DNA from: Scyliorhinus canicula
Lineage: Eukaryota
Length of the DNA stretch: 64,000 bases
NCBI RefSeq assembly: GCF_902713615.1
Contig: NW_024055479.1
Span: 248,001 to 312,000, forward strand
Direction: 5' to 3'
The position numbers and the translations under genes are program-made. The notes below the pieces were generated by a model that was not told the origin of the DNA, made no database searches, and saw only the letters and a program-made list of their open reading frames with translations. Below, one piece after another: positions 18,194-45,500 of this stretch; within the stretch, counting starts at the first letter, position 1, and every line of letters starts with the position of its first letter.

Positions 18194-18576
18194 GCAGCAT
18201 CCCCCATGACGACGGCATTGCTGCAACAGGCTCAGTCCTCAACACCGACAACTTCCACAACAGGGATCTTGGATTCATGTCGCATTACATCCACCCCCCA
18301 CCATCAGGCCTGGACTTGAAAAACCCTACCAACTGTTCGGGCTTGAGACAATTTACACCTCTTTAACCTGTGATTATCCCTCTCCCTGGATCTGCAATGA
18401 TTTGATTACCTGCAAATGCCTGCATTCCAAGCATTGTCCAGCATCTCTGACTTTGTCTATATAAATGTTTCGGGAACATACCTCGCCATTCACCTGAGGA
18501 AGGAGCTGCGCTCCGAAAGCTCGTGTTTGAATCAAACCTGTTGGACTTTAACCTTGTGTTGTAAGACTTCTTACTG
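18194..18576 (+). mobile_element. Inverted Penelope segment: short RT piece, ORF C-terminus (NRDLGFMSHY) and 3' terminal repeat
   Basis: 18194-18255 is the reverse complement of ~16865-16925; the 3' part matches the terminal repeats at 35911-36014 and 26960-27085. Confidence 0.85.
18491..18525 (+). ncRNA. Minimal type-I hammerhead ribozyme in the Penelope terminal repeat
   Basis: CAC-CTGAGGA-A-GGAGC-TGC-GCTCC-GAAA-GCTC-GTG: core, 5-bp stem II, palindromic AGCT stem III and CAC/GTG stem I. Confidence 0.75.
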
Positions 18577-18949
18577 TGGAGGGTGGTTCACATCAGACGA
18601 TAAGGGAGGGGGACAATAAATAAGAGCTGACACTTTGCACTCAAATCAGTGAGTACTCTGATCTCTGGCAAGGAAGGAAACCCTGGCAGGTGGGTGGGGC
18701 GGATTCACAAACACCCGCTGGAGGCCCCAAACCCCCAATAAGACCCATTGATTTTATTGTCAGTCTGCAGACAAGAGCTGGAGAACTGAACCCAAGCAGA
18801 GGAGAGGGAGGGAGAAAACTGGGAGTGGAGGAAAGAAATGGTGCAGATAGTGAGATGTGTTTGCATTTCAGCCCAGGGAGGAGGGAGAGTGTGTGGGATT
18901 TACAGCTTTGGGGGAACAAGAGAGGAAAAAATGTTCCAGAGAAACTAGA

Positions 18950-26300: not shown

Positions 26301-26389
26301 ACTAATGTAACATAAGTGGAAACAGGCAGTCTTAGTGATAGCACAGACAGGAGTCCAAAGATGTTCAGGTTAGGTGGATTGGCCAAGTT

Positions 26390-27085
26390 CCACACGCATG
26401 GGTACGGCCTCAACCGGGACCTTAGATTCATGTTGCATTACATTCATGCCCTCAACATCTGGCCTGGGCTTACAAAGTCCTACCAACTGTGCTGGCTTGA
26501 GACAATTCACATCTCTTTAACCTGTGATTAGCCCTCTCTCCAATTGCACCATCTGGATCTGTAAAGATTTAATTACCTGCAAAAACTCGCATTCAAAGTA
26601 TCATCTTGCATCATTGAATTTGTCTATATATGTTTTTTTTCATAGAATTTAGTGCAGAAAGAGGCCATTCGGCCCATCGAGTCTGCACCGGCTCTTGGAA
26701 AGAGCACCCTACCCAAGGTCAACACCTCCTCCTATCCCAATAACCCCACCCAACACTAAGGGCAATTTATCATGGCCAATCCACCTAACCTGCACATCTT
26801 TGGACTGTGGGAGGAAACCGGAGCACCCGGAGGAAACCCACGCAGACACGGGGAGGATGTGCAGACTCCCACAGACAGTGACCCGAGCCGGAATCGAACC
26901 TGGGACCCTGGAGCTGTGAAGCCATTGTGCTATCCACAATGCTACCGTGCTGCCCTCTTCATTCACCTGAGGAAGGAGTTGTGCTCCAAAAGCTAGTGAT
27001 GTGACACAAACCTATTGGACTTGAACCTGGTGTTATAAGACTTCTTCTGTGCCCACCCCAGGCCAATGCCGGCATCTCCACATCT
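26390..27085 (+). mobile_element. Penelope 3' end / terminal repeat interrupted by an HE1 SINE (26641-26955, minus)
   Basis: HGYGLNRDLRFMLHY; 3' UTR similar to 18270-18575; degenerate hammerhead at 26964-26998. Confidence 0.8.
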
Positions 27086-28574
27086 AGACTAGTAAAGCAG
27101 AGAACCAGGCTGAAGCTCCGGGGATCGGGGTTCCACACGGCAGATTAACGCAGCAACCCAATTCAAGGGCAATTCAGGATGGGTGTAAATGAATAATGAA
27201 AATGTCAATCATGTAACTTTTCCACACACAGAAATGAATGGGCTTTGATAATGTTTCTGTGCGGGTTTAAACCGAGGGCCTTTGAGCAAACATGATAATC
27301 ACTACACTACAGAAACAGGAAACATCGCTTAGTGCACTGACCGAGAATAGTAAACTATGCGTCCTTATTGCCCTGAAGAACCTGCTGTTGTGGGAGTACA
27401 ATTTGGCTGAAAATTAGGCAACTGGCGGAGAAATTGATCTGACATTAGAATCATAAAATGCCACAGCACATTAGAAAACCATTCACAACTAATACCTGTG
27501 AACTCTGAAAGCGATTCCTGCCATTCTCCATCACAGAGTATTTTGCAAGGTAATGCATTTGTTTAACTATTGAACAATAAATAACAATGATACAACTTAT
27601 CTGCAAATGTTAATGTGTAACGTCAATAATGTTTCGAATAATAATATGGGACATTTGGTGTGTGAGGGGAACGTGATAACCAGTACACTGAAAAAACAGC
27701 TGATTCGCAATGAGCCCATTGGACTGGTGTTTGGAAAATATGTTGTGTTATCTGTAAAAGTGATAAAAGTCGAATCAAAATATAGATTGAAAAAGAGCAA
27801 ATCGATTAGTCTCAATGCCTTTCTTTCTTTCTGTGATCTTGAGGATTCTCTATTCCAATTATTCTTCCAATTTGCTTTTGAAAAAGGAGTTTCTGCAGAA
27901 TCCTTGCTCAGTCTGATTTAATGACAATGTTCCCCATGTCCAATGACCAGAAGATTTGGACATTCAGATGGTGTAGTTTATGATATAAACATTATGTAAT
28001 CATGCAATTGGTTTCATATTGAATTTACAAAAGTGTATTTTTCTGCTGAAGCAACTTGTTATTATTTCTGAGTTGATAACAGAATTTAATACATTTGATC
28101 TACATCCTGTTTACAGAGTCTGTCTATTAGAGAGGGATTTGTAAAGTGTAACAAAGCCTTCTAGAGATGACTTTGCTGAAGTAGTTTACTTTATTAGATT
28201 TCAAATTAACTATGAAATGTAGACATGACCGCTCAGCAAATATCTACGGGCGAAATGATTTCCTATCATTCAGTAATAATATCATTCTTATATTCCTTTG
28301 AAAAACATCAAACAATTTTGCTCAGTATTTGTTCCATTACTCCAAACGTGATATTATTTGATATTTATGTCCTCATCCTAAAATGTGACTCTCTGAAATA
28401 TACAACATTTAATTGCAAACATGACTGACAAAATAAATTGAGTCACTGGGTAATATAAGTTCTGTTGAGTTCATTTGAGATTGCCCATGTCAGTTTTTAA
28501 ACACAATCAAATATCTTCACAGGTAGGAGATTAAAGAATGATAAATTTATTATATTTGACCCTCTTTGTTCTGG

Positions 28575-28835
28575 GTATGAAATGAGATGAGGAGAAATTT
28601 CTTCAACCAGATAGTGGTTAGTCTGTGGAAATTCTTATCACAGGATATAGTTGAGGCCAATACGTTCTTTGTTTTCAAGAAGCAGTTAGATATAGCACTG
28701 AGGGCGAAAGGGATCAAAGGATATGGAGGGGAAAGCGGGATTAGGCTATGGAGTTGGATGATAAGCCATGATCATAATGAATGTCAGAGCAGGTGCCAAG
28801 GCCAAATGATCTCTTCCTGCTCCTATTTTCTATGT
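28575..28835 (+). mobile_element. CR1 3' end
   Basis: MRRNFFNQIVVSLW...GIKGYG followed by a CR1-type 3' UTR. Confidence 0.85.
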
Positions 28836-28849
28836 AATCCCTTCCCTCA

Positions 28850-29800
28850 CTAAGAGCAGGTGAACGGTCTCTCCCCAGTGTGAACTCGCTGATGTTTCTG
28901 CAAACTGGATAAAGCACGGAATCTCTGTCCACACTGAGAGCAGGTGAATGGCTTCTCCCCAGTGTGAACTCGCTGGTGTGTCTGCAGATTGAATAATTGT
29001 GCGAATCCCTTCCCACACTGAGAGCAGGTGAATGGCCTCTCGCCAGTGTGAACACGCTGATGTCTCCGCAGACTGGATAAATCACTGAACCCCTTCCCAC
29101 ATTGAGAGCAGGTGAATGGCCTCTCTCCACTGTGGACTCGCTGGTGTGTCTGCAGACTGGATAACCAAGTGAATCCCTGCCCACACTGAGAGCAGATGAA
29201 TGGCCTCTCCCCAGTGTGAACTCGCTGGTGTCTCAGCAGATTGGATAAATCATTGAATCCCTTCCCACACTGAGAGCAGGTGAATGGCCTCTCCTCAGTG
29301 TGAACTCGCTGATGTCTCCGCAGGCTGGATAAATCACTGAATCCCTTCCCACACTGAGAGCAGGTGAATGGCTTCTCTCCAGTGTGAATTCGCTGGTGTG
29401 TCCGCAGGTTGGATGAATCAATGAATCCCTTCCCACACTGAGAGCAGGTGAATGGCTTCTCCCCAGTGTGAGTTCGCTGGTGTGTCTGCAGATTGAATAA
29501 TTGTGTGAATCCTTTCCCACACTGAGAGCAGGTGAATGGCCTCTCCCCAGTGTGAACTCGCTGGTGTGACTGCAGACTGGATGACTGTGTGAAACCCTTC
29601 CCACACTGAGAGCAGGTAAATGGTTTCTCCCCAGTGTGAACTCGCTGGTGTGCCTGAAGGTTAGATAACTGAGTGAATCCTTTCCCACATTTAGAGCAGG
29701 TGAACGGCCTCTCCCCAGTGTGAATGCGCTGATGAATCTCCAGCTTAGACGGGACTCTGAATCCCTTCCCACAGTCCCCACATTTCCACGGTTTCTCCAT
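28850..29800 (-). CDS. KRAB-less C2H2 zinc-finger protein, 11 complete fingers (316 aa), stop inside a 12th finger
   Basis: MEKPWKC start, canonical TGE[KR]PF linkers; TAG (from CAG) at 28850-28852 next to a CR1 insertion; family acceptor cassette near 30170-30240. Confidence 0.8.
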
Positions 29801-30410
29801 GTTTTAGGTCTCCTCGTGTCTCTCCAGATTGGACAATCAGTTGAAGCCTTGTCTGCACACAGAACATGTGCACTGTCTCTCCTCACTGTGAATGGGGTGA
29901 TGTTTTTTCAGGCTGTGTATCTGGTTGAAGCTCTTTCCACAATCAACTCACTGGAACTCTCTCATTCGGGTGTGTGTTGTGTGGGTCTCGGTGCTTTTCC
30001 AGTCACACTCATATTTAAAATCTTCTGAAGCCGATAGATCGGACAAACATTTCTCCTTCTTGCCGACGATATTCAGAGCTCAATGATATTCAGATCAGAA
30101 GGAATCGAATAAGTTTGTCACTTCGCGACATGATGTTTGAGATTATGTCTATAATTCCACCTCTTCCAATATCCTTTAAAAACAATTAACAAAAGTTATC
30201 ATTGTTCGTACAGGATAGAAATTCAGAACAGACAATTCTAGTTCCTATGGAATATTATTTCCTCTCTCATTGTAAATCTCCATCACACACAATCTCCCTC
30301 CATTCTCACTCTGCTGTATTTAATATTCACCCTCCCAATTCTCCTGAAGGTGCTGATTCATGTTGATTGACAGATCCAAGCTCAGCTCACTGCTTCCTGA
30401 CCAGGACACA

Positions 30411-30726
30411 GGGGCCTCACGGTAGCATGGTGGTTAGCATCAATGCTTCACAGCTCCAGGGTCCCAGGTTCGATTCCCGGCTGGGTCACTGTCTGTGTGG
30501 AGTCTGCACGTCCTCCCTGTGTGTGCGTGGGTTTCCTCCGGGTGCTCTGGTTTCCTCCCACAGTCCAAAGATGTGCGGGTTAGGTGGATTGGCCATTCTA
30601 AATTGCCCGTAGTGTAAGGTTAATGGGGGTATTGTTGGGATACGGGTTACGTGGGTTTAAGTAGGGTGATCATTGCTCGGCACAACATCGAGGGCCGAAG
30701 GGCCTGTTCTGTGCTGTACTGTTCTT
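30411..30726 (+). mobile_element. HE1-like V-SINE, full length
   Basis: tRNA head, V-domain and tail ...GGGCCTGTTCTGTGCTGTACTGTTCT. Confidence 0.9.
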
Positions 30727-30729
30727 CTA

Positions 30730-31428
30730 TTAGAATAGGAGCAGGAGTAGGCCATTCAGCCCACCGATTCTGCTCAACCACTCAATGAGATCCTTGGCCG
30801 ATCTACCTCAACACTATTTTCCCACACAATCCCCATATCCCTTGATATCTTCAATATCTAGAAACCTATCAATATTTGTCTTGAACATACCTGGTGACTG
30901 AGGCTCCACATTCTTCTGGGACAGAGAATTCCAAAGCTTCACCACTTCCTGAGTGAAGAAATCCCTCCTCAGCTCAGCTTTCTGTCTATTTTCCTGCCTG
31001 AACCCCATAACCCTTAACTCCATTGTCCATCAAATATCTGTCAAACCCGTGTTTGAATATAATCAATGACCCCCAGACTTCGCTGCTCACTGTGTAGAGA
31101 AATCCAAAGACAAACCTTCAGAACATCATATTCATTTTTATTGCCACAAGTAGGCTTACATTAACACTGCAATGAAGTTACTGTGAAAAGCCACTAGTCG
31201 CCACATTCCGGCACCTGTTTGGGTACACAGGGAGAATTCTGAATCTCCAGATTACCTAACAGCACATCTTTCCTTCCCACTTGTGGGAGGAAACCAGAGC
31301 ACCGGGAGGAAACCATGCAGACACGGGGAGAATGTGCAGACTCCGCACAGACAGTGACCCAAGTGGGAATCGAAGCCAGGTCCCTGGCGATGTGAAGCAA
31401 CAGTGCTAACCACTGTGCAACCGTGCCA
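30730..31428 (-). mobile_element. CR1 3'-end fragments (30730-31110) and a V-SINE (31135-31428)
   Basis: LRRDFFTQEVVKLWNSL...IKGYG; SINE core and tail. Confidence 0.8.
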
Positions 31429-31629
31429 CTACATTAGATATATCTCTGCCCAATGTTAATTTACTGTCCCTGAAATGTCAGCCATATCCTGGGGAAACCA
31501 GCCCTTTAATTGGGAACATTAGGAAAGAGATCATCCTTTTAACTTGACAAATAAATGAATCAAGCTGAGGGACACTGCAGCCTGTGAAGTATTTTCGGGC
31601 ACTAGGACCTGGCCTGGAACAGTCTATGA

Positions 31630-31765
31630 AGCCCCGCCCATTACTGACGTCACCACAACCCCGCATGCGCACCGCTCCATCTGAATCAAGATGGCGGCCG
31701 TTAAACTGGGCCTTTTATCGGGAAAAAGACACGATGCTGCAAACGCAGGACCTACAGGTACGTAT
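31630..31765 (+). promoter_or_regulatory. CpG-rich promoter and first exon with a splice donor
   Basis: GC box 31632-31639, CRE TGACGTCA 31645-31652, NRF1-like GCATGCGCA 31663-31671, YY1 CAAGATGGCGGC 31687-31698, donor CAG|GTACGT at 31757/31758. Confidence 0.7.
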
Positions 31766-32739
31766 TCCTGGTTTAGGGCCTTCACGCGGTGTTTAAAAAC
31801 TCCCTTCTTCCAGAGCTGGCTCTATCGCTTCGTTCGGATTGCCACATCCTTACCCGCTGCCGAGGACACAAAGAAGCGTCTCTTTCCCAGGCGGCATCAC
31901 ATACTGCGCATGCTCCAACTACTCCCAGGCAATGCACCTGCGCAATGCTGTCCTGCGGTGTCGATAGGGGACATTCACCACCGCGGGGAATGCCGGTTAA
32001 TGAACACGCCATTCATCATCCCAATTAGTGAATAGTGATTTTTGTTTGCTATGTTGTGAAGATTGGGTGGATGGGATAAAAATTATACATAAATCCAAGT
32101 GAGCAGGCCCTCAATTATAAACCAGAACAAAGGGGAGTACAAATTAATTTTCATTGAGGTATAATGAAAAGTATTGGGCTGGACCAAGTCCCCACGCCAG
32201 CGTGCAAGAGTTGGTGTTTTACGCCAGGAAAATTGGCACAAAACAGCCACTGATTCCCTGCTCCGAGGGAGGGAGAGGGAGTCGGGGACTAGCAGGGAGG
32301 CAGCATATAGCTCCCATCTCTAGATTCTGATACAGCCTGGAGGATTGCTGGGTCCGTGGCCGCACATGCGCAGGGTGAGACCAGCAGCGGCCTCGCTGTG
32401 CTTCACGGCAGACCATGCCCGGGACCCGGACCGCAAAAGTAGTATCCCCTTAGGCCGCTCGCATGCCCCGGACCTCCCCCCTACAGTGCTCCCAGTTGAA
32501 GCCCTCCCTGCTCGCGGATCGGCCCTACCCCGACTGAATATGATGCAAGGTTGCCGAACGGCTGGGACCATGAGAATCCGACGTCGTCGCGAACTCGGCC
32601 GATTGGAGACGGAGCATTCCGGGGCGGTCCTCCGGCAATCGCCTCAGGCCATGCCGCATGCGGAGTACTCCAAGAATACACCGATTTTCAGGAGGCAGAG
32701 CTTCCGAAAACTGGTGCCAATCCCGATTTCGCCGTCAAA

Positions 32740-33220
32740 ACAGATTCAATAAAATCAGGGCTGAATTGGTTGTGGTCTCAGTTCCCCTTGCCTGTCTGCA
32801 CCACCAACCCCTGCACCCAGAACCCTTGTCTCCCTTGTCTATCAAAAATCTGTCTTAACTCTGCCTTAAATAAATTCAATATCCCAGCCTCCACTGTTCT
32901 CTGGGAAGTGAATTCCACAGACTAATGAACTTCGGGGAAAAAAAATTATCCTCATTTTAGCCTTCATGTTCTCCCCATCTCTCATTCTTTTTTTTTCTTT
33001 TTTTAAAAGTAAATTTCGAGTACCCAATTATTTCTTCCAATTAAGGGGCAATTTAGCATGGCCAATCCACCTAACTTGCACATCTTTGGGTTGTGGGGGT
33101 GAAACCCATGCAAACACGGGGAGAATGTGCAAACGCCACATGGACAGTGACCCAGGGCCGAGATTCGAACCCAGGTCCTCAGCACTGTAAGCAGCAATGC
33201 TAACCACTGTACTGCCCCCC
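32740..33220 (-). mobile_element. CR1 3'-end fragment plus V-SINE (32995-33220)
   Basis: Similarity to the other CR1 tails and SINE cores in the window. Confidence 0.75.
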
Positions 33221-33779
33221 ATGTCTCATTCTTAAAGTGTGTCACCTCGTTCTAGTCTTTCCCACGGGTCCAAACCGCAGTTGACTTGTTGGGTCCGGAA
33301 ATTTCCAATGTGGGACACTAAAGGGAGGTAGGTTCCAGGAGAAATTATTTTTTAAGCAGACGTTGTCCAACATTGCAATAGAATACAGCATTGTTTGATT
33401 AACAAGTATATCCATTGAGTGTTTCAAGCTACAACGGTGTTCCAAAATACATTTGGTAGAATTGCAGAATTTCCATTCACTGACGATGGAGGAACAGGGA
33501 TAAATGTCCAACTCAGAATGATGTGTGACTGGAAGAGGATTTGTAGGTGATGGTGTTTGTCTACACCGGTGCCCTCATCTTTGTAGCTGGTGCGGTGACA
33601 GGTTCTGTTAATGTCCTGGCAAACTCTTGTGTAGGTTCAGAGCTGATGGCAGGTACCTTTCCCGGAAGGATATTAACATCGCAGTTGGGTTTTTACAATA
33701 ATCCAGCAGTTTCATGATCTCCTTTTCTAATGCTGGTCCCATCGATTCTGCCCAATGTCACAACCTGTCTACTTGTTTT

Positions 33780-34262
33780 TGTGGCCTCTCTGTTATGCTC
33801 CCTTTTTGCTTTCTTAAGACCATATTAAAGAGGTAGAAAATTTAAGACAGACTTGAGGAGAAACTACTTCTCCCAAATGGTTGTGAATCTGTGGAATTCG
33901 CTACCCCAGAGTGCGGTGGATGCAGGGACAGTGAGTAAATTTATGGAGAAGTTAGACAGATTTTTAATTGGTAATGGGGATAAAGGTTTATGGAGAACGG
34001 GCAGAACATTGGAGTTGAGGCACTACGAGATCAGCCATGATCACATTGAAGGTGTTTAGGCTCTGGATGCTAAATTGCCTACTCCTGCTCCTAGGTCATG
34101 TGTTCTAGGGAGGAGATGCTCTAGCTGATTTTGCAATCCAGCTCCTGCTCTGCAGATGAGGTGACAGATGAGAAACATATCAGCCATGATAGAATGGCGG
34201 ATCAGACTCACTTATAATAATAATGGGCCAAATGGCCTAATTCTGCTCCTATATCTTCTGAA
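33780..34262 (+). mobile_element. Tandem CR1 3' ends
   Basis: MRRNYFSQMVVNLWNSLP...; two or three CR1-type 3' UTRs. Confidence 0.75.
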
Positions 34263-34439
34263 CTTATGAACTGTTTCTTACTCTCAAATTGAGTGAATCC
34301 TTTGCTGTTTCTCCTCTGGGCCCCATCTCCACTATTATTGTCTGATTGTCCCACTGAGACTCTCACTGTTATTATTGGACAATCAGGGAGTCAGTCAGCC
34401 TGAGCCTGTGGCCGCTCTCACCATCTGGAACCGTCACAA

Positions 34440-34835
34440 TGCCCGGGTGATTGACGACAGCTCTGGACCAATAGGAAGAGCATGGGTGGGGCTGGAGGAC
34501 CGACCGAGCGCGGCTGGTCCTCCAACCAATCGGAGTGAATGAGGGGATTTGATTGAAGCATGCGCAGTGTGGGTAATGGTGATGGACAGCAGCTCCTTGT
34601 TGAGATCTAAAATCGGGAAGAGGCAATTGACGGGGCGGAGGGAGCGAAGAAACATGTGGTTAGGCGGAAAAGCTCCGTAAACATGTTGTGTGAGCTGCAA
34701 ATCTGGGAAAAGAGCTTACCTGACCCAATTTGTGCCGAGCGGGGCTGCAGATCCTCATGTTAGACCCGGGTGAATGGCCACCATCTTTATTGGGGTAAAG
34801 CGCACCAGGGCGCATGTGGAGCCGCCATCTTTGTT
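34440..34835. promoter_or_regulatory. CpG-rich, possibly bidirectional promoter; minus-strand first exon ending at donor 34720/34719
   Basis: CCAAT 34468-34472 and 34526-34530, GCATGCGCA ~34558, GGGGCGG ~34633, YY1 AAGATGGCGGC on the minus strand at 34821-34831, CAG|GTAAG on the minus strand. Confidence 0.65.
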
Positions 34836-34857
34836 GGAGGCAATGTTTTTAAAAAAA

Positions 34858-35305
34858 GAATAATCCTTATCATCACAAGTAGGCATACATTAACACTGCA
34901 ATGAAGTTACTGTGAAAATCCCCTATCGCCACATTTCAGCGCCTGTTGGGGTACACAGAGCGTGAATTCAGAATGTCCAAATTACCTAACAGCACATCTT
35001 CACACTCTGCACAGACAGTGACCCAAGCCAAGAATCGAACCTAGGACCCTGACGCTGTGAAGCAACAGTGCTAATCACTGTGCTACCGTAGATTGGCCAC
35101 GCTTAATTACTCCTTAATGTCCAGGGATGTGCAGGTTAGGTTCTTGGTTATGGGGATAAGGTGGGTGGATGAGGGAATGTAAATGGGTAGAGCGCTCATT
35201 CGAAGGGTTGGTGCAGACTCAATGGGCCGAATGGCCTCCTTCTGCACTGTTCGGGTACACAGAGGGAGAATTCAGAATGTCCAACTCTCCTAACAGCATG
35301 TCTTT
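34858..35305. mobile_element. Nested V-SINE fragments in both orientations
   Basis: SINE head, core and tail pieces. Confidence 0.75.
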
Positions 35306-35961
35306 TGGGATGTGTTGAAGGAGGTGATTGTTTTGGGAGGCATTTGTTACCCTATGTTCAGAATGAAGCCAACCATCAATCTACATTAGCCTTTGAGTCC
35401 CAACGTCTTATTGTTGAAGCAGAGCAGGAAAAGAAGAGAAAGACGTTCTGCTTTTCAGTTCTCACTACCTCTTGGGCTATTCTCCTCCATGTGTCCAAAG
35501 ACCTACGACTGTGTCCAGTCACATGAAGAACCATGTCAAATCTCTCAACCTACCCTGAGTAAACATCATCCTCGAATAGAGGGACTGCTGATGACATGGA
35601 GGGGCAAAGTGTAGCAGGGAGTATGAGCGTTCATCCTGGACCAGGGAGCAGGAGGAGAGAATGTTGTGAATTTCTATCCTGGACTGACAGTGATTAATTT
35701 TGGAAAATCCTTTTACAGGGGGTTAGAAAGGGAGGATTTACACAAAGCAAACTCAAACCAAGAATAGGTTTACTTTTTTCCTGAATTTCTTGTTTGGACT
35801 GACAAAGATGGCTTTTGTAACTTTCATTTTCAGGGTTTTAGAAAAGGATTTGCAGGCAGGAAACACAAGCGAATCCTGACATCAAACTCCTACAGCATCA
35901 CTCAATTCATCAGTAAGAAGTCTTACAACACCAGGTTAAAGTCCAACAGGTTTGTTTCAAA

Positions 35962-35996
35962 CACGAGCTTTCGGAGCACGGCTCCTTCTTCAGGTG
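35962..35996 (-). ncRNA. Minimal hammerhead ribozyme (downstream copy on the element strand)
   Basis: Minus strand CAC-CTGAAGA-A-GGAGC-CGT-GCTCC-GAAA-GCTC-GTG. Confidence 0.78.
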
Positions 35997-36271
35997 AATG
36001 GAAAGGCTTGTTCCAGAAATGTTTATATAGACACAGTCAGAGATGCCCCGGAATGCGAGCACCTGCAGGCAATCAAATCATCAAAGATGCAGATGTAGAA
36101 ACTGAATGTCAGTGTCTATATGCGCGATCTTCCTGGAGATCCTCTCCACTTTGAGCCGGCAGTTTGCGGTGTCAATGGTAGCCATGATGTGGAGATGCCG
36201 GCGTTGGACTGGGGTGAGCACAGTAAGAAGTCTTACAACACCAGGTTAAAGTCCAACAGGTTTGTTTCAAA

Positions 36272-36306
36272 CACGAGCTTTCGGAGCACGGCTCCTTCTT
36301 CAGGTG
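36272..36306 (-). ncRNA. Minimal hammerhead ribozyme (upstream copy on the element strand)
   Basis: Identical to 35962-35996. Confidence 0.78.
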
Positions 36307-36679
36307 AATGGAAAGGCTTGTTCCCAATTCATCAGGACCTGGATATTATTGCACTTTCAGTGTAAGCATTGAGTTCCAAGTCATTACCATTCACTGTAAA
36401 ATTTCTGCCTCATATCACCCTGTAGATCTTGCTCCAAATCTTAAATCTGTGTCCTGAAATCCTTTTGCAATCAGCTGGAAAGAGCAACGTTTCTTTAACT
36501 ACTTTACCGAGATCAATCAGAAACTTGTACCTAAATCAATCTCCTTTCTTCCAAGGAGAACAACCGCAGTTTCTCCAACCTAACATTGCAACTAAAATCC
36601 CTCATTCCTGGAACTATTCTGGTAAGTCTCCCCTGCACTCTTTCAAGGACCGTCACATCCTCCATAATATGTGGTTTGA

Positions 36680-36913
36680 GGGCAGCACGGTGGCCTAGTG
36701 GTTAGCACAACCGCCTCACGGCGCTGAGGTCCCAGGTTCGATCCCGGCTCTGGGTCACTGTCCGTGTGGAGTTTGCACATTCTCCCCGTGTTTGCGTGGG
36801 TTTCGCCCCCACAACCCAAAAATGTGCAGAGTAGGTGGATTGGCCACGCAAAATTGCCCCTTAATTGGAAAAAATAATTGGCTAATCTAAATTTATAAAA
36901 AAAAAAAAAAAAA
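36680..36913 (+). mobile_element. Young A-tailed V-SINE with a 13-bp TSD
   Basis: AATATGTGGTTTG at 36666-36678 and 36914-36926; long poly(A). Confidence 0.92.
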
Positions 36914-37469
36914 AATATGTGGTTTGCACAGATCCAGATGTTCTGTCTTCCTGTCTGTGATGTCATCACGCACCGACACTTGCACGGTGACATCACCCCC
37001 CGTTCCCCGATATTTCCTCAACTAGGAAACTTTTCCTCCGACTCCAGAGTTGCTGATATCTATCCAGCTGCAGGCTACAGTGGGACATTTTAATATTGAA
37101 AACAATGAAACTGCTTCACAGCTCAGTATTTCTGAGCATTTATCAACAATTTTGAGCTTTTAGTGCTCTGCTCTGTTACCTGTGAGGGGTTCCATGTCTC
37201 TGGAGCTGGTGTGACTCTCAAAAAACAATGCAAAACGCCCATGGAGGGTGCGGGCTACCAGCTATTGACATATAAAATCCCTTCTTTTTCTCTCTCGCTC
37301 GCTCCCTCCCTCAGAAAACTCAACCAAAATTCACTTCAAAATCTGACAGTCACTCAGTTCATGAGGACCTAAATGTAAGTGTTTCTGTTTGATCTGTGGT
37401 TAAAGATTTAAACATCTGTGCAGCTGAAAATAGGATAGAGCAAGATTTGCAAACAAGGATGTGAATGTT

Positions 37470-37690
37470 CCATTGAGATACTGCTTAACCAGGGCCCAAT
37501 GTAGGTCAATGAGCACAGGGGTGATGGGTAAGTGAGTGGGACTCAAATTTGGCAGATTCCCTTCCCTGAAGGACATTCGTGAACCAGTTGGGTTTTTACA
37601 ACAATCCAGCAGCTTTCATGGTCACTTTTTCCCAGTGCCGGCCCCACAAATGACCAGATTCATTCAGCTCAATTTCACAACCTGCCTTTG
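37470..37690 (-). mobile_element. SacSINE1/DeuSINE-like fragment
   Basis: GGACATTCGTGAACCAGTTGGGTTTTTACAAC is the reverse complement of the central domain at 56580-56610. Confidence 0.6.
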
Positions 37691-37745
37691 TGTTTTTGTG
37701 GTTTCTCTCTCACTCCCTTTATTCTGTTTCAAATCAGTTTCACAG

Positions 37746-38558
<813 letters not shown>

Positions 38559-38699
38559 CTGTTGTGATTGGAATTTGCTGGTGATCATATTCAGGACTGA
38601 ACCATGTCCATCTGAGTCTGTTTCTGCTTAATTAAAAAATAACTCCAGCTCAGTTATAGGTGTTAATATAGTTGGTCTTTGAAAGAGAGGATTTGCAGT

Positions 38700-39360
38700 T
38701 AGGAAACACAAACCAAACATCATATCAGCATCTAACACTTACCGAATTTATCGGAAACTGAATCAGATTTTGAACATAGCAGGAAAAAGCACCGTTCACA
38801 GTGGAGAGGAACCGCACGTGTCCTGTGTGTGGACAAGGCTTCAGCCAATCATCTGGCCTGCCAGTATATAAATGCAGTCACACTGGGAGAAACCATGGAA
38901 ATGTCGAGACTGTGGGAAGGGATTTGATTACCCATCCAAGTTGAAAATCCATCAGTGCACTCACACTGGGAGAGACCGTTCATCTGCTCCCAGTGTGGGA
39001 AAGGGCTGACACACTCACACCACTTGCAGCCACACCAACATTTCCCGCTGGAGAGAGGCTGTTCACCTGCTTCCACTGTGAGAAGGGATTTGCACATTCC
39101 TCCAATCTGCTGAGACATCAGTGAGTTCACACTGGGGAGAGACCATTTAAACATCCACACTGTGAGGAGTTTTAAAACAATTCTGGGGAACTGATGTCCT
39201 ATCAACATGTACACGCTGTAGAACGGGTTCAGACTATCTTCTCGCCTCACTAGAGCTGCGAGTTCACACAGGGGAGAAGCCGTTCACCTGCTCCGAGTGT
39301 AGGAGTGGATTCACTCAGTTATCCAAACTGCTGATGCACCAACAAGTTCAGGGATTGGAT
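38700..39360 (+). pseudogene. Decayed C2H2 zinc-finger exon with multiple frameshifts
   Basis: EKPWKC.DCGKGF and TGERPF remnants with no long ORF. Confidence 0.8.
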
Positions 39361-39559
39361 TTTTATGGTAATCACATCCTGGACTGAAACATGTTAATTG
39401 GGGTCAATTGCTGCTGATGTTCATGAACTCCAACCCAGTTAGAAGCAATTAAATTCTGAATAAAAATCAAGTCAAACTAGTTTGTGTGAATTATAGTGCA
39501 TTGAGTCTTTTTAATATCGCTGAAACAAGTTAGTTCCTTTTGAAGGGCTCTCCTCTCCG

Positions 39560-39700
39560 TCTCCTCCATCCTCACTTCCAACAACAAGCGTGAGGAGCTC
39601 GTGGAGTTTGTCACTAAGATTGAGACAATCTGATCATCTGTCGCTGCTATTCCCTCCTTCCACTCGTCCACCGGGCCAAACTGCTCGGAAGTCCATTTTT
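39560..39700 (+). mobile_element. Probable L2 LINE fragment
   Basis: CAACAACAAGCGTGAGGAGCTC...GTCACTAAGATTGAGAC resembles a shark L2 ORF2 segment (recognition from memory only). Confidence 0.4.
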
Positions 39701-40177
39701 ATCCAAGGTCTTTGACTCCATCATCTTTGCAAGTGGACTTGTAATAGTTTTGATAAAGAAAGAAATTACAGGAAGTTTTAATGTCAGAATAAAGGACAAA
39801 AAAGTGTCCAGTTCAGGTTCAAAGATGGGTAATATTAGCATTGAAACATTAACTCTGTTTCTCTCACCACAGATGCTGCCTGACCTGCTGAGATTTTCCA
39901 GAACTTTCTGTTTTGATTTCAGTAAGCTTTTAAAATAGCTTAATACTCAGGTCAATCATTTTATCCACGAGGGTTCGAGAGCCTCAGAAGCATCCAACTG
40001 CACCATTAAACTCTCAGATTACTACAGCAGATATTCATTGTTCTGGCTCAGCCAGCCTGACTGTGGAATTAATTGGATGGATGTTTCAAAGAGCCACCTC
40101 TGGTATATTAGACCGAATGGTTTCAATCTGTGCTGTATCATTCTATAAAACAATGAATATTCCACAGGAATAGGCTC

Positions 40178-40400
40178 GGGCAGCACGGTGGCGCAATGGT
40201 TAGCACTGCTGCCTCATGGCACCGAGGTCCCAGGTTTGATCCCGGCTCTGGGTCACTGTCCATGTGGAGTTTGAACATTCTCCCCATGTTTGCATGGATC
40301 TTACCCCCACAACCTAAAGATGTGCCAGGTAGGTGGATTGACCATGGTAAATTGCCCCTTAATTGGAAAAATGAATTGGGTACTCTAAATTCATAAAAAA
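40178..40400 (+). mobile_element. V-SINE (A-tailed)
   Basis: Head, core and A tail; AGGAATAG repeated on both flanks. Confidence 0.88.
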
Positions 40401-40688
40401 GGAATAGAAGTCGGCCATTCATTTGATTTATTGTCACATGCACTGAAGTACAGTGACAAGTATTTTTCTGCGGCCAATTATTTGTGTTAAATACTGTGTG
40501 TTAAGTCTTTTTAATATCTCTAACCTAAGTTCCCCCTCTGCCCTGTTCCTCCACCTTCACCCCTGTGGCTTCTCCTGTGGCTTCTTTGTCATTCAGATTG
40601 GGCAGGGTTTTCCGGTTCTCCTGTGGCTTCTTTCTCATTCAGATTGAGCAGGGTTTTTTGGTTCTCCTGTGGCTTCCCATTGGCCACA

Positions 40689-40822
40689 GGTGGGATCTTC
40701 CAGTCCTGTCAAAGTCTACGGCCTTTTGCATGGTTCATCCGTCCTGCCGCATGGGAGGCTGCCGCAAGGCGGTTGGTGAGTCTGGAAGATCCAACCAGCG
40801 GTAAGGGCTGGAAAATTCCACC
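40689..40822. mobile_element. Small hairpin element (MITE-like)
   Basis: Terminal inverted repeats GGTGGGATCTTCCAG and CTGGAAAATTCCACC (13/15 match). Confidence 0.55.
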
Positions 40823-41094
40823 CACTGAAACAATCGGATTCTGTTGATTCTAATAATCTTTATGACTGTCACAAGCAAGCTTACATTAACACTGCAATGA
40901 AGTTACTGTGAAAATCCCTGTAAAAATCCTTCACTAAACCACTCAGTAAAATTGCCTATGAAGTCCTTTCTTGCCCAAGTTCTGAACTCACATCTTTCTC
41001 CTCTTTTCCTGCTGTCTCCCATCATGCTCTCTCAGAGCTCATCTTGTTTGTGAAACTCACCCATTGCTCCTTTGACCTGATTCTCACTAACCTG

Positions 41095-41550
41095 CCGAAC
41101 AGCCACTTCCACAATCTCCATGTTTCCATGATATCTCCATGGAGTCAGTGTCTTCGTGCCTCTCCTCTTTAGACAATCAGTTGAAGCTCGGCCACACACA
41201 CAACACATGGATGGTTTCTCCTGGCAGTGAATGGTGTGATCTTTCCTTCAGGCTGTGTAACAGGTTAAAGCTCTTTCCACAGTCAGTTCACTGGAACACT
41301 CTCTCTCGGGTGTGTGTCTGTCTCAGTGATTTTCCAGTCACACTGATGTTTGAATATTTTCCCACAAAGGAAACTTTTTCATTCCACATTCATAGTCTGA
41401 GGATATTCAGATCCTGATTAACCGAATGACACTGTTGGAGCTTGATGTGATATTTGATTTGTGTTTCCAGTCTGAAAGTCCTCTCCTAATGCCCTGTAAC
41501 TGAAATTCAGAACAGACAATTCCAGTTTCTGGGCAACATTTTTCCTCCAT
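41095..41550 (-). pseudogene. 5' remnant of a ZNF-family exon
   Basis: Family acceptor and leader sequence with a degenerate MEISW-K-GDCG start; homologous to 29790-30240. Confidence 0.65.
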
Positions 41551-41566
41551 ACGGACAGTGACCCAG

Positions 41567-42250
41567 TCGAAGTAAACGATGAATTCAGCAGGTATTTCTT
41601 CATCGTCTATCAAATCTTCATAAGCCTCTTCGACATCTTCAACGGGGAGGAAAGCTAACGCTGAAAAACATCGAATTTTAAGACAGAATTCAGAGTCTGT
41701 GTTGTATTTTTCTTTGAGGCCTAAATCGGTAATTTTTCGAAACACAGATTGGCTCAAATGAAACAAACATGCCACGACAGATGCATTAAGGAATGATGAA
41801 TTAATTGCCTTGTGAACTGCAGCTTCGAAATCTGCCATGATATCAATCGGATCTGCATCAGGTTGCATAATTTTCAATTGGTCAAAGAATAATTCGTATG
41901 TCTGCTTCCTTTTATTCGGCAGTAATGCAAAGACCCGTGGTAGACTGCTACCTTTAACTTGTACATGAATGCAGAACAGTTGAAACCACTGTTGTGGCAC
42001 AATCTTGAATGTTCCATCACATGCCCAATGACGATATGATGCAAAATCCTGAAGAGCACTTTCTGATGCGAATACTAGTAAGCGCTGTTGATCCTCGACG
42101 CCCGAATCGAACCTCAGAAACTGCTCGTCATTGTCAAGCTTGCAATATTTGTCAGGTATTTCAAAACCGTGTCTAGCCGCTGGATTAGCGGGAAATCCAG
42201 AATTTTTTTGTCGGCACCTTTGAATAGTCCTTGAGACGACGGGCAACCTT
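41567..42250 (-). mobile_element. MULE transposase catalytic region (3'-truncated) of a Phantom-like Mutator element
   Basis: WACDGTFKIVPQQWFQLFCIH...FALLPNKRKQTY...ADFEAAV...CLFHLSQ. Confidence 0.9.
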
Positions 42251-42520
42251 GGGAGCAGGTATTTTCTCTTTTTTTTAAAATAATTTTTATTGAGAAATCT
42301 TGATTTTATACAACATTGACGCACCTTAGTAAAATACCGAAAATAACAATAATATTAACAATCATATACATTCGCCCCATCCCCATGAACAACCCAGCAT
42401 TTTAACAACAACGCAAATTAACACACTATAAAGTTACAGAATAAACACTACAATAATGCACCCCCACCCCCACCCCCCCCCCCCCCCCCCCCGGGTTGCT
42501 GCTGCTATTGACCCAGTTAC

Positions 42521-45500
42521 CTATCTCTGAGCCAGGAAGTCCAGAAAAGGCTGCCATCGTTTATAGAACCCTTGTATTGATCCTCTCAGGGCAAATTTGA
42601 CCTTTTCCAATTTTATAAATCCCGCCATGTCACTGATCCAGGTCTCCACACTTGGGGGCCTTGCATCCTTCCATTGTAACAGAATCCTTCGACGGGCTAC
42701 TAGGGACGCAAAGGCCAGGACACCGGCCTCTTTCGCCTCCTGCACTCCCGGCTCTACCGCAACTCCAAAAATCGCGAGTCCCCACCCTGGTTTGACCCTG
42801 GATCCAACCACCCTCGACACCGTCCCCGCCACCCCCTTCCAGAATTCTTCCAGTGCTGGGCATGCCCAGAACATTTGGGCATGGTTCGCAGGACTCCCCG
42901 AACATCTGGTGCACCTGTCCTCACCCCCGAAGAACCTACTCATCCTAGTCCCGGACATGTGGGCCCGGTGCAGCACCTTAAATTGGATGAGACTAAGCCT
43001 CGCACATGAGGAGGAAGAGTTGACTCTCTCCAAGGCCTCCGCCCAAGTCCCGTCCTCCATCTGCTCCCCGAGTTCCTCCTCCCATTTAGCCTTCAGCTCC
43101 TCCATTGACGACTCCTCCACCTCCTGCATTACCTTATAGATGACCGACACCTTCCCCTCTCCTACCCACACCCCCGAAAGCATTCTGTCCATCGTCCCCT
43201 GCGAGGGCAGCAAAGGGAATCCCTCTACCTGTCGCCTAGCAAACGCCTTTACCTGCAGGTATCTGAACATGTTCCCCTGGGGGAGGCCAAATTTATCTTC
43301 CAGTTCCCCCAGGCCCTCAAACCACCCGCCAATAAATAGGTCCCTCAATTTGCTGATGCCCGCCCTTTGCCACCCCCTAAATCCCCCATCCGTGTTCCCC
43401 GGGATGAACCGATGGTTACAACCCAGTGGAGCCTCCATCGAGCCCCCTGTTTCCCCCCAAAGCCGTCTCCACTGTCCCCAGATTCTTAGGGTCGCCGCCA
43501 CCACCTGGCTCGTGGTAAACCTCTTAGGGGAGAGCGGCAACGGTGCCGTTACCATGGCACCCAGGCTCGTACCTCTACATGACGCCATCTCCATTCTTTT
43601 CCACGCCGCCCCTCCCCCCTCCATCACCCATTTACGCACCATTGACACATTGGCTGCCCAATAGTACCCCAGAAGGTTGGGCAGCGCCAGCCCACCTCTA
43701 TCCCTTCCTCGCTCCAGGAACACCATCCTCACTCTCGGAGTCCCATGTGCCCACACAAAGCTCAGAATACTGCTAGTCACTCTCCTAAAGAAGGCCCTGG
43801 GGATAAATATGGGCAGGCACTGAAAAAGGAACAAGAACCTCGGAATTTTGACGGACTGCACCCTCCCCGCCAACGACAATGGCAGCATGTCCCACCTCCT
43901 GAACTCCTCCTCCATCTGATCTACCAGTCTGGTAAAGTTATGCTTGTGGAGAGTCCCCCAGTCCCTGGCAACTTGCACCCCCAGGTACCTAAAGCTCTCC
44001 CCTGCCCGCCTAAGCGGGAGCCTACCAATTCCTTCCTCCTGGTCTCCAGGGTGCACCACAAACACCTCGCTCTTGCCTAAGTTTAATTTATACCCTGAGA
44101 AGGTCCCAAACTCGGCTAGTAACTCCATCACTCCAGGCATCCCTCCCACCGGGTCCGCCACATACAGTAACAGGTCGTCGGCAGACAACGACACCCTATG
44201 TTCCTCTCCACCTCGCACCAAGCCTCTCCACCTCTCTGAATCTCTCAATGTCATCGCCAGCGGCTCGATTGCCAGTGCAAACAACAAGGGGGACAGGGGG
44301 CAACCCTGCCTGGTCCCTCGGTAAAGCCGGAAGTACTCCGACCTCCTCCTATTCGTGGCCACGCACGCCATCGGGGCCTCATATAGCAGCCTTACCCATC
44401 TAATGAACCCTTCACCAAATCCAAACCTCCCCAACACCTCCCATAGGTACCCCCACTCCATTCTATCGAAGGCCTTCTCCGCATCCAGCGCCACCACTAT
44501 CTCTGCCTCCCCCTCAATCGCCGGCATCATAATGACATTCAGCAATCTCCGCACATTCGTGTTCAGCTGCCTTCCCTTCACAAAACCTATCTGGTCCTCG
44601 TGCACAACCCCTGGCACACAGTCCTCTATCCTGGTGGCCAGGATTTTTGCCAGCACCTTAGCATCCACGTTGAGGAGAGATATGGGCCTGTATGAACCAC
44701 ACTGCTGGGGGTCCTTGTCCTTCTTTAAAATTAACGAGATCAGCGCCCGTGACATCGTCGGGGGCAAAGTCCCCCCTCCCACGCTTCATTGAGTGTTCGC
44801 ACCAGCAAGGGGCCCACTAGATCCACAAACTTTTTATAAAATTCCACCGGGAACCCATCCGGCCCCGGTGTCTTCCCTGACTGCATCTGCCCGATCCCCT
44901 TAACTAGCTCCTCCAGCTCAATCGGCGCACCCAACCCCTCCACCTTCTCCTCCTGCACCTTCGGGAAAGAAAGCCCGTCAAGGAACCTCTCCATTCCCCT
45001 CCTCTCCCCCGTTGGCTCCGACCGGTACAGTTCCCCGTAAAAGTCCTTGAAGACCTCATTCACCTCTACCCCCTTCCGCACCACATTCCCACTCTTACCT
45101 CTCACTCCAGCAATCTCCTTAGCCGCATCCCGCTTACGCAGCTGATGAGCCAGCATCCTACTCGCTTTTTCACCATGTTCGTACACTGCCCCTTGTGCCT
45201 TCCTCCACTGTGCCTCCGCCTTTCTAGTGGTCAGCAAATCAAATTTAGCCTGCAGGCTGCGCCTCTCCCCCAACAGTCCCTCCTCTGGTGCCTCTGCATA
45301 CCTCCTGTCCACCTCCAGCATCTTTCCCACCAGTCTATCCCTCTCACTCCTCTCGCTCCTCTCCCTGTGTGCCCGGATGGATATCAGCTCCCCACGAATT
45401 ACTGCCTTCAGGGCTTCCCAGACCATCCCCACCTGAACCTCCCCCGTATCATTCACCTCGAGGTACCCCTCAATACTTGCCCGGACCCTCCTACACACCT

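What the first reader, a model, noticed from the sequence alone, without database searches (positions are those of the whole stretch)
35903..36335. Retrozyme-like mini-Penelope: two identical hammerheads bracket a 310-nt unit, inserted with a clean TSD
Seen: a 411-bp insert flanked by CAATTCATCAG on both sides. It carries two identical 104-bp direct repeats, each holding CAC-CUGAAGA-A-GGAGC-CGU-GCUCC-GAAA-GCUC-GUG on the minus strand. Between them lie the first ~30 codons of a Penelope ORF fused to the Penelope 3' UTR, with RT and endonuclease deleted. Known: Penelope terminal repeats carry minimal type-I hammerheads whose short palindromic stem III needs dimeric folding; an extra A after A9 occurs in a natural viroid hammerhead; metazoan non-LTR retrozymes are units of a few hundred nt that give circular RNAs. 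Inference: the two copies on one RNA could form a double hammerhead, cut at 36275/36274 and 35965/35964, and release a 310-nt monomer able to circularise and be mobilised in trans by Penelope RT. Identical repeats and an intact TSD suggest recent insertion as a unit.
Basis: partly seen in the sequence, partly recalled or inferred. Interest (0 to 1): 0.85.

Follow-up and report, generated by a model that had tools for sequence, protein, structure and literature searches.

The report
Internally deleted shark Penelope insertion
This is a very young 411-bp copy of an active shark Penelope-like retrotransposon that lost its whole protein-coding middle and kept only the end pieces with two small hammerhead ribozyme motifs. 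It is one of many such mini copies in this genome, a known kind of element. No test here could show that this copy cuts itself or makes a circular RNA.

Summary
Window 35914-36324 is a 411-bp insert with two identical 101-104-nt terminal repeats 310 nt apart. It is flanked by an 11-bp target duplication, and paralogous copies of the host sequence carry that 11-mer once and lack the insert.

The insert is 100% identical to positions 1-231 and 2906-2984 (plus the repeat) of a 2984-nt Penelope-like element (PLE). That element has a 905-aa ORF with a reverse transcriptase (RT) and a GIY-YIG endonuclease, and 2674 nt of it are missing here. Each repeat holds a hammerhead with every hallmark published for PLE minimal hammerheads. 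Rfam does not detect it.

However, at least 24 other junction types exist at about 27 loci. These loci have their own target duplications. Two junction types recur at two or three loci. One 4-kb array of about 12 identical 333-nt units lies inside a single target duplication.

So the PLE repeatedly spawns retrozyme-sized mini units, and this copy is a singleton of that class. Self-cleavage and circular RNA remain untested: no contig in the four runs carried the junction. PLE hammerheads, PLE-derived animal retrozymes and non-autonomous PLEs are already published. The scan has noted Penelope hammerhead elements many times in this genome. Verdict: new member of a known kind.

The parts
35903..35913 (.). 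Target-site duplication, left copy (CAATTCATCAG)
   Evidence: Paralogous empty sites L077-L080 have this 11-mer once.
36325..36335 (.). Target-site duplication, right copy
35914..36324 (-). Whole insert: 1.33 units of an internally deleted Penelope-like element (unit 310 nt)
   Evidence: 100% identical to full-length unit positions 1-231, then 2906-2984, then 1-101.
36221..36324 (-). 5' pseudo-LTR copy (element positions 1-104)
35911..36014 (-). 3' pseudo-LTR copy. The insert ends at element position 101-104 (..CTTACTG), one of the two usual 3' ends of this family.
   Evidence: Two internal RT start sites and the 'tail' are described in PMC11167929.
36268..36310 (-). Hammerhead motif, 5' copy: stem I 36304-36310 / 36268-36274, core and stem II 36275-36303, predicted cut 36275|36274
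   Evidence: Features match PLE minimal hammerheads. No Rfam hit.
35958..36000 (-). Hammerhead motif, 3' copy: core 35965-35993, predicted cut 35965|35964
36081..36185 (-). Remnant ORF: 30 codons plus 2 nt of the PLE ORF, then 4 out-of-frame 3'-UTR codons and a stop (34 codons)
36093..36094 (-). Deletion junction (full-length 231 | 2906): 2674 nt missing, no microhomology, unique in the genome
36015..36093 (-). Last 79 nt of the 127-nt PLE 3' UTR
36025..36121 (-). 13/15-nt complementarity between the 5' ORF region (36107-36121) and the 3' UTR (36025-36039). It closes a stem around the junction in the predicted fold.
   Evidence: (I2). No covariation seen, so a role is speculative.

Best explanation
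The insert is a very recent, non-autonomous internal-deletion derivative of an active Penelope-like element (PLE) of a catshark-like genome. It was inserted by the PLE's own target-primed reverse transcription into one paralog of a multi-copy host segment. cDNA synthesis started at the family's usual internal start site (element position about 103). It ran back through the last 79 nt of the 3' UTR, continued at position 231 so that 2674 nt with RT and endonuclease are missing, and stopped after 1.33 units. That overrun duplicates the pseudo-LTR and its minimal type-I hammerhead. Shown: the anatomy, the parent element, the true target duplication, the uniqueness of the junction, and the existence of many sibling minis. 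Inferred: the deletion arose by RT template switching, or already existed in the template RNA, rather than in genomic DNA. Also inferred: the two hammerheads could pair through their AGCU helix III. This copy has the size and parts of an animal non-LTR retrozyme unit, but nothing shows that it has cut, circularised or moved again.
For: One search shows the identical repeats and the 11-bp target duplication. Searches show more than 15 paralogs of the flanks at 94-100% identity. The four I read (L077-L080) have one copy of the 11-mer (one with a small indel inside it) and no insert, and coordinates show the flanks abutting in several others, including a copy on C104 that is 100% identical over about 2.7 kb. 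Searches show 100% identity to a 2984-nt unit that occurs as identical tandem copies. Searches show a 905-aa ORF with RVT_1 and a GIY-YIG-type C-terminus, best hits in sharks at 84-91% identity, and PF01541 in relatives. One search shows the junction is unique in 4.22 Gb. Searches show at least 24 other junction types, with 5' breakpoints at 228-291, 3' breakpoints at 2879-2913 and 0-2 nt of microhomology. In inverted or tandem insertions every unit and arm that spans the junction region shares one junction, which argues against later genomic deletion. Insert 3' ends fall at about 102-106 or about 138-148, as in the published two start sites and 'tail' of PLEs. The hammerhead matches all published PLE minimal-hammerhead hallmarks. 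The exact 35-nt motif occurs 11,581 times. Variants change only N7, loop 2 and H17.
Against: No Rfam hammerhead model matches, even at E<=10. No RNA evidence exists for this locus: no contig in four runs bridges 36093/36094, and those runs are only guessed to be RNA. For this single copy, a deletion in DNA after insertion cannot be strictly excluded. I could not determine whether the template was a linear tandem transcript, a jumped template or a circle.
Confidence: 0.85

Rival explanations
1. One reading: the locus is a working retrozyme. A transcript with both hammerheads folds as a double hammerhead, cuts at 36275/36274 and 35965/35964, and releases a 310-nt monomer. A host ligase circularises the monomer, and PLE RT copies it, possibly by rolling circle, into new loci.
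For: The unit size (310 nt) and its parts fit animal non-LTR retrozymes of 150-450 nt. Sibling minis occur as multi-unit arrays inside one target duplication. L073 has 6.5 plus 5.7 identical 333-nt units whose junction is found nowhere else, so a multimeric or circular template is needed. Junction 250/2897 lies at 3 loci and 266/2897 at 2 loci, each with a different target duplication. PLE RT initiates internally and so could use a circle. Two cDNA 5' ends coincide with the predicted cut: L006 and window 54785-54838. The circular fold of the monomer has z = -2.1.
Against: This junction is unique and was not seen in any contig of four runs. PLE minimal hammerheads cleave poorly in vitro. In the Anolis PLE the ribozyme needed protein, was dispensable for insertion, and left no read ends at the cut site. 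The insert's 3' end lies 51-54 nt beyond the cut site, so the template was not a cleaved linear monomer. No promoter upstream of the first hammerhead is shown. The 3' breakpoints fall in hot spots, so shared junctions could be recurrent jumps.
Confidence: 0.25
2. A full-length Penelope with both pseudo-LTRs inserted here, and the 2674-bp middle was later lost by a genomic deletion such as end joining or slippage.
For: It cannot be excluded for one locus from sequence alone. The junction has no microhomology, which is compatible with end joining.
Against: The retained parts show zero divergence from the master copy, so there was little time. About 27 other loci carry similarly placed deletions. 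Within an insertion, the arms and tandem units that span the junction region carry the same junction, so the deletion predates integration there. Breakpoints cluster next to the same short retained ends far more than larger remnants do: about 27 loci with 0-80 nt retained between the anchors against about 12 loci for 81-400 nt.
Confidence: 0.05
3. The hammerhead-like motifs are inert passengers. They are conserved only because the family is young, and the element's structure and spread owe nothing to ribozyme activity.
For: There is no Rfam hit. Helix III is only a 4-nt palindrome and helix I has 5 Watson-Crick pairs in 7. Nearly all of the 11,581 copies are identical by descent, so their identity says little about constraint. 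Published data show the ribozyme is dispensable for insertion in vitro.
Against: The same architecture recurs in PLEs across eukaryotes. Diverged families here differ only at N7, loop 2 and H17. There are a few 5' ends at the predicted cut.
Confidence: 0.25

Closest known systems
Penelope-like elements with minimal type-I hammerheads in their pseudo-LTRs (Cervera & de la Pena 2014, PMC4209133)
   Same: The repeat arises from a partial tandem. [quoted passage not shown]
   Different: RT and endonuclease are deleted here. Only 231 nt of the 5' end and 79 nt of the 3' end remain.
Animal non-LTR retrozymes (Cervera & de la Pena 2020, PMC7229834) and their proposed PLE origin (Li, Clavereau & Pollet 2026 preprint, 10.64898/2026.07.22.740005)
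   Same: A non-coding unit of a few hundred nt with one type-I hammerhead per unit and target duplications longer than 4 bp. It co-exists with autonomous PLEs and is homologous to PLE termini. One chondrichthyan in the preprint has retrozymes averaging 363 bp.
   Different: This locus has only 1.33 units and is a singleton. No circular RNA is shown. It is 100% identical to its living parent, whereas described retrozyme families are diverged consensus families.
Poseidon element PAc of Anolis carolinensis (Frangieh et al. 2024, PMC11167929)
   Same: Tandem pLTR-ORF organisation, reverse transcription starting at two adjacent internal sites (the 'tail'), extension from both cleaved DNA strands, and a hammerhead at the pLTR-ORF border.
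   Different: Here the start sites (about 103 and about 140) lie before or at the ATG, not 111-118 nt into the ORF. The hammerhead lies wholly upstream of the ORF.
Non-autonomous Chlamys PLEs such as MRC1, and an internally deleted Chlamys-3 copy in Chlamydomonas (Craig et al. 2021, PMC8557442)
   Same: Non-autonomous PLE derivatives that form pseudo-LTRs and multicopy head-to-tail insertions. One transcribed copy has a 2.84-kb internal deletion.
   Different: They belong to a different PLE clade in green algae, and most lack canonical hammerheads.

Membership tests
Penelope-like element (non-autonomous derivative) | Parent element encodes an RT plus a C-terminal GIY-YIG endonuclease in one ORF | tested here: met
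   The parent has a 905-aa ORF. Pfam RVT_1 scores E 5.9e-10. A CxxC..VVY..YIG..R..H..E..N C-terminus is read by eye. Relatives carry PF00078 and PF01541. My local Pfam scan of the C-terminus alone gave no hit.
Penelope-like element (non-autonomous derivative) | Pseudo-LTRs formed by partial tandem copies | tested here: met
   The insert is 1.33 units with identical 101-104-nt ends. Full-length copies lie in tandem with a 2984-nt period.
Penelope-like element (non-autonomous derivative) | Insertion with a target duplication and a 3' end at the family's internal RT start sites (with or without the 30-40-nt tail) | tested here: met
   The 11-bp target duplication is verified by empty paralogs. 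The 3' end is at position 101-104. Sibling copies end at about 102-106 or about 138-148.
Penelope-like element (non-autonomous derivative) | Own RT and endonuclease present (autonomy) | tested here: not met
   Positions 232-2905 are deleted and only 30 codons remain. The copy is therefore non-autonomous.
Type-I minimal hammerhead of PLEs | Conserved core C3-U4-G5-A6-N7-G8-A9, G12-A13-A14, A15.1/U16.1 and H17 | tested here: met
   CUGAAGA..GAAA-GCU-C is read directly from the sequence.
Type-I minimal hammerhead of PLEs | Extra nucleotide between 9 and 10.1, a G10.1-C11.1 pair and a palindromic 15.2-16.2 / helix III | tested here: met
   An A follows A9, stem II is GGAGC/GCUCC and helix III is the AGCU palindrome. 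The hallmarks are as listed in PMC4209133.
Type-I minimal hammerhead of PLEs | Match to a curated hammerhead covariance model (Rfam) | tested here: not met
   There is no hammerhead hit at gathering score or at E<=10 on 841 nt. This is expected for a motif without a closed helix III, but it is still a negative.
Type-I minimal hammerhead of PLEs | Variation confined to permissive positions, or compensatory changes | tested here: inconclusive
   Variants differ only at N7, loop 2 and H17. No compensatory stem changes were seen, and the copies are mostly identical by descent.
Type-I minimal hammerhead of PLEs | Site-specific self-cleavage | not testable with these tools
   Only indirect evidence exists: two cDNA 5' ends at element position 51 to 53.
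Animal non-LTR retrozyme | Non-coding unit of about 150-450 nt carrying a type-I hammerhead | tested here: met
   The unit is 310 nt with a 34-codon remnant ORF.
Animal non-LTR retrozyme | Tandem multi-copy arrangement | tested here: inconclusive
   This locus has only 1.33 units. Sibling minis form arrays of 2-12 units.
Animal non-LTR retrozyme | Propagates as a family (same unit at many sites) | tested here: not met
   The junction is unique in 4.22 Gb. Two other junction types occur at 2-3 loci.
Animal non-LTR retrozyme | Expressed as linear and circular RNA | tested here: inconclusive
   No contig bridges the junction in 4 runs. The runs are contigs only and their RNA status is a guess.

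The most novel reading that the evidence does not exclude
This genome catches the birth of animal retrozymes in the act. An active PLE repeatedly generates 310-380-nt units that keep the hammerhead, through RT jumps between hot spots next to the retained 5' (up to about 228) and 3' (from about 2914) cis-elements. These units are processed by the dimeric hammerhead into circles. The internally initiating PLE RT then copies the circles by rolling circle, which would explain pseudo-LTRs and single-event multi-unit arrays. On this reading the window copy is a functional, newly born 310-nt retrozyme.
Probability: 0.2. Interest if true: 0.7.

Novelty: new member of a known kind. Interest (0 to 1): 0.4.

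Why it matters
On its own the locus is an ordinary young transposon fragment. Its value lies in the family context.

The origin of animal hammerhead retrozymes from Penelope-like elements has so far been argued from co-occurrence and from phylogeny of diverged consensus sequences. Here the parent and dozens of independently deleted daughters are still 99-100% identical. That makes three things readable directly:
- the exact breakpoints
- the minimal retained cis-regions (first about 228 nt and last about 71 nt)
- the single-event multi-unit arrays

Together these give a concrete, testable system for two questions: what the PLE RT needs in its template, and whether circular templates are used.

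Tried and rejected
1. Rfam gave no hammerhead hit, either at gathering score on the whole window or at E<=10 on 841 nt. Identification of the hammerhead therefore rests on reading the motif and on published PLE hallmarks.

2. Read laying on four runs showed an 'empty-site' joint 35902->36325 in all four. I first read this as insertion polymorphism and then rejected that reading. The flanks are multi-copy (at least 20 paralogs at 95% identity or more) and the paralogs checked are empty, so the joint can come from paralogs.

3. I could not resolve whether C104 is the other haplotype, which would make the insertion heterozygous. It is 100% identical over about 2.7 kb apart from a 137-nt indel and the empty site.

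4. I counted copies with a non-C base before position 51 as a genome-wide test for cDNA 5' ends at the cut site. The test was confounded. Most of the 8,428 hits have A, which marks families with H17 = A, and T is expected from CpG decay.

5. The step in k-mer depth near the cut site fits a break at positions 50/51 in coarse bins. It can also come from divergence between PLE families at positions 51-57, as the loose ends at 35957/8 suggest, so I do not use it.

6. Folding gave little. The 411-nt RNA has z = -1.3 and the circular monomer z = -2.1. Cofolding of two hammerheads pairs them through stem II, not helix III.

7. Splicing as the cause of the deletion is rejected: there are no GT..AG ends and the junctions vary.

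8. I looked in my loci for the U3-A8 compensated core mentioned in other scan notes and found none.

Full report
**1. What is in the sequence**

Window 35911-36014 and 36221-36324 are identical 104-nt direct repeats 310 nt apart. CAATTCATCAG lies at 35903-35913 and again at 36325-36335. The element is sense on the minus strand.

Each repeat reads CAC-CUGAAGA-A-GGAGC-CGU-GCUCC-GAAA-GCU-C followed by GUG. This 29-nt core occurs twice exactly, plus once in a diverged form at 18494-18522, against 0 expected by chance. The predicted cleavage sites after C17 are 36275|36274 and 35965|35964, which are 310 nt apart.

**2. The parent element**

A search of the window's own 4.22-Gb assembly found at least 30 places that are 100% identical to the first 231 nt of the insert. 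In those places the last 180 nt of the insert lie directly upstream. This is the arrangement of tandem full-length elements.

One such array (L031) has three units of 2984 nt. The two complete units are identical to each other. The unit carries a 905-aa ORF from ATG at unit position 140 to the stop at 2857. The ORF has:
- a Pfam RVT_1 domain
- a C-terminal CxxC..VVY..YIG..R..H..E..N region typical of the GIY-YIG endonuclease of Penelope-like elements

Its best database relatives are shark proteins: Scyliorhinus torazame at 91%, Heptranchias at 84% and Mustelus at 82%. Many relatives carry PF00078 plus PF01541.

The insert equals unit positions 1-231, then 2906-2984, then 1-101. The 2674 nt holding RT and endonuclease are absent, and the junction has no microhomology. 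What remains is 30 codons plus 2 nt, then 4 UTR codons and a stop.

**3. The insertion event**

The flanks are themselves multi-copy. More than 15 places in the assembly match them at 94-100% identity over several kb. Other scan notes place the window in an IgH cluster region. I did not verify that, but it would explain the paralogy.

The four paralogs I read (L077-L080) have the left flank running straight into the right flank with no insert. Three carry exactly one CAATTCATCAG, and L080 has a small indel inside it. For several further copies the match coordinates show the two flanks abutting with an 11-nt overlap. The 11-mers are therefore a real target-site duplication, and the insert boundaries are exact.

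The closest copy, on C104, is 100% identical over about 2.7 kb apart from a 137-nt indel, and it is empty. So the insertion is younger than the youngest duplication or haplotype split of this segment. The insert also shows no substitution against the master copy.

**4. The hammerhead**

Rfam finds nothing, even at E<=10 on 841 nt. The motif nevertheless has every feature that Cervera and de la Pena (2014) list as consistently emerging in PLE minimal hammerheads:
- the conserved core
- a G10.1-C11.1 pair
- a palindromic minimal helix III (AGCU here), expected to pair between two copies

The 'extra A' is therefore the family norm, not an exception borrowed from a viroid.

The exact 35-nt motif occurs 11,581 times in the genome. 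Diverged families differ only at N7, loop 2 and H17. That is consistent with constraint but weak, because most copies are identical by descent.

The literature cautions against assuming activity. PLE minimal hammerheads cleave poorly in vitro. In the Anolis element the ribozyme needed protein, was dispensable for insertion, and left no read ends at the cut site.

**5.

The 40-nt junction sequence occurs only once in the genome, even allowing 2 mismatches.

A gapped pattern across the junction region tells a second story. It found 56 matches with up to 80 nt between the anchors, at about 27 loci, and about 12 more loci with 81-400 nt. Mapped to the full-length unit, the first set gives:
- at least 24 distinct junction types
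- 5' breakpoints at 228-291
- 3' breakpoints at 2879-2913, with hot spots near 2885, 2897, 2904-2906 and 2913
- 0-2 nt of microhomology, and in some cases a filler copied from inside the ORF

This census required the 14 nt ending at position 228 and the 17 nt starting at 2914. Breakpoints outside those anchors were therefore not sampled.

**6. Structure of the sibling minis**

Most are head-to-head insertions flanked by their own target duplications of 7-13 bp (most 8-11 bp). One arm ends at about 102-106 and the other at about 138-148. This is the published PLE signature of a 30-40-nt tail on one side and extension from both cleaved strands.

Within an insertion, the arms and tandem units that span the junction region carry the same junction. 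The deletion therefore predates integration.

Junction 250/2897 lies at three loci with different target duplications, and 266/2897 lies at two. This fits re-mobilisation of already deleted RNAs. Recurrent jumps at hot spots cannot be excluded, and no private substitutions are available to decide.

The locus at C2:78.22 Mb (L073) has 6.5 inverted plus 5.7 direct units of 333 nt. All complete units compared are identical, and the whole array lies inside one target duplication. Its junction is found nowhere else. That event needed a multimeric or circular template, or repeated end-to-end template jumps.

**7. What this means for the window copy**

The simplest account is an ordinary PLE insertion. 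cDNA started at position about 103 and was copied from a tandem transcript, a jumped template or a circle. It skipped from 2906 to 231 and stopped after 411 nt. The two identical repeats follow automatically from covering 1.33 units.

The copy has the size and parts of an animal non-LTR retrozyme unit. The retained regions probably mark what the RT needs. In Anolis the protein-binding region is in the first 172 nt of the ORF, and initiation is internal.

The insert's 3' end lies 51-54 nt beyond the predicted cut. The template was therefore not a cleaved linear monomer, though a circle or an uncleaved multimer would serve.

**8. RNA evidence**

The listed runs are Logan contigs whose RNA status is only guessed. 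In four of them, contigs follow the full-length element on both sides of 36093/36094 and none bridges the junction. This is uninformative, because those samples may lack the insertion.

There are two fossil hints of cleavage in vivo. The direct arm of L006 begins exactly at position 51. A tiny copy with its own target duplication, at window 54785-54838, begins at 51-53. That is 2 of roughly 35 inner 5' ends, where about 0.5 would be expected by chance. An earlier scan follow-up reports a similar single locus.

**9. Novelty**

The following are already published:
- hammerheads in PLE pseudo-LTRs
- their dimeric mode of action
- animal non-LTR retrozymes
- the proposal that PLEs mobilise those retrozymes
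- the claim that retrozymes derive from PLE termini
- non-autonomous and internally deleted PLEs

The scan index returned 463 notes matching the words 'Penelope hammerhead' in this genome. The locus is a new member of a known kind.

What I did not find in the papers I read is the family-level picture. It consists of dozens of independent, still-identical deletion derivatives with clustered breakpoints, together with single-event multi-unit arrays.

Noticed in passing
L073 (G000:C2:78218400-78222470): A 4.07-kb head-to-head array of 6.5 plus 5.7 identical 333-nt mini-Penelope units lies inside one target duplication (about GGGGCCTTT). Its deletion junction (245/2897) is found nowhere else in the genome. 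This implies a multimeric or circular template in a single event.
   Followed up: partly
window 54785-54838 (-): A tiny Penelope insertion is flanked by CCATTATTGA. It has a 13-nt inverted tail piece joined to a direct arm that begins at element position 51-53, the predicted hammerhead cut, and ends at 102.
   Followed up: partly
L006 (G000:C5:176460069-176460655): In this head-to-head mini, the direct arm starts exactly at the predicted hammerhead cleavage product (GUGUUUG..). In L054 the two arms meet inside the AGCU helix-III palindrome.
   Followed up: partly
window 15878-18578: An older Penelope copy (about 93% identity to the master) has a head-to-head structure. Its hammerhead variant at 18494-18522 reads CUGAGGA-A-GGAGC-UGC-GCUCC-GAAAGCUC, the same variant as in L007. 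More decayed fragments lie at 26382-27084.
   Followed up: partly
window 28000-44000 and flanks of the insert: The host segment is multi-copy, with more than 15 copies at 94-100% identity on many small contigs (C104, C107, C619, C621, C61, C633 and others). Other scan notes call this window an IgH cluster region. C104 differs from the window by a 137-nt indel at window 34042-34178 and by the empty insertion site.
   Followed up: partly
genome-wide (one search list, contig C1): The exact 35-nt hammerhead occurs 11,581 times. About a quarter of the listed hits are head-to-head pairs only 39-100 nt apart, so very short palindromic insertions are common. Their arms stop a few nt upstream of hammerhead stem I (positions about 9-17). 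This could mark an RNA 5' end or an RT stop.
   Followed up: no
genome-wide: A sister family with A instead of C at the cleavage-site nucleotide (H17) and the same downstream sequence is very abundant, making up most of 8,428 matches.
   Followed up: no
L069 (G000:C26:15560000-15562500): This mini array has a junction carrying a 23-nt filler copied from inside the ORF (around codon 85), so two template jumps occurred in one deletion.
   Followed up: no
window 36174: Contigs of four runs show G instead of A here (element position 151, fourth codon of the ORF) at 30-68% of depth. This is a common variant among family copies.
   Followed up: no
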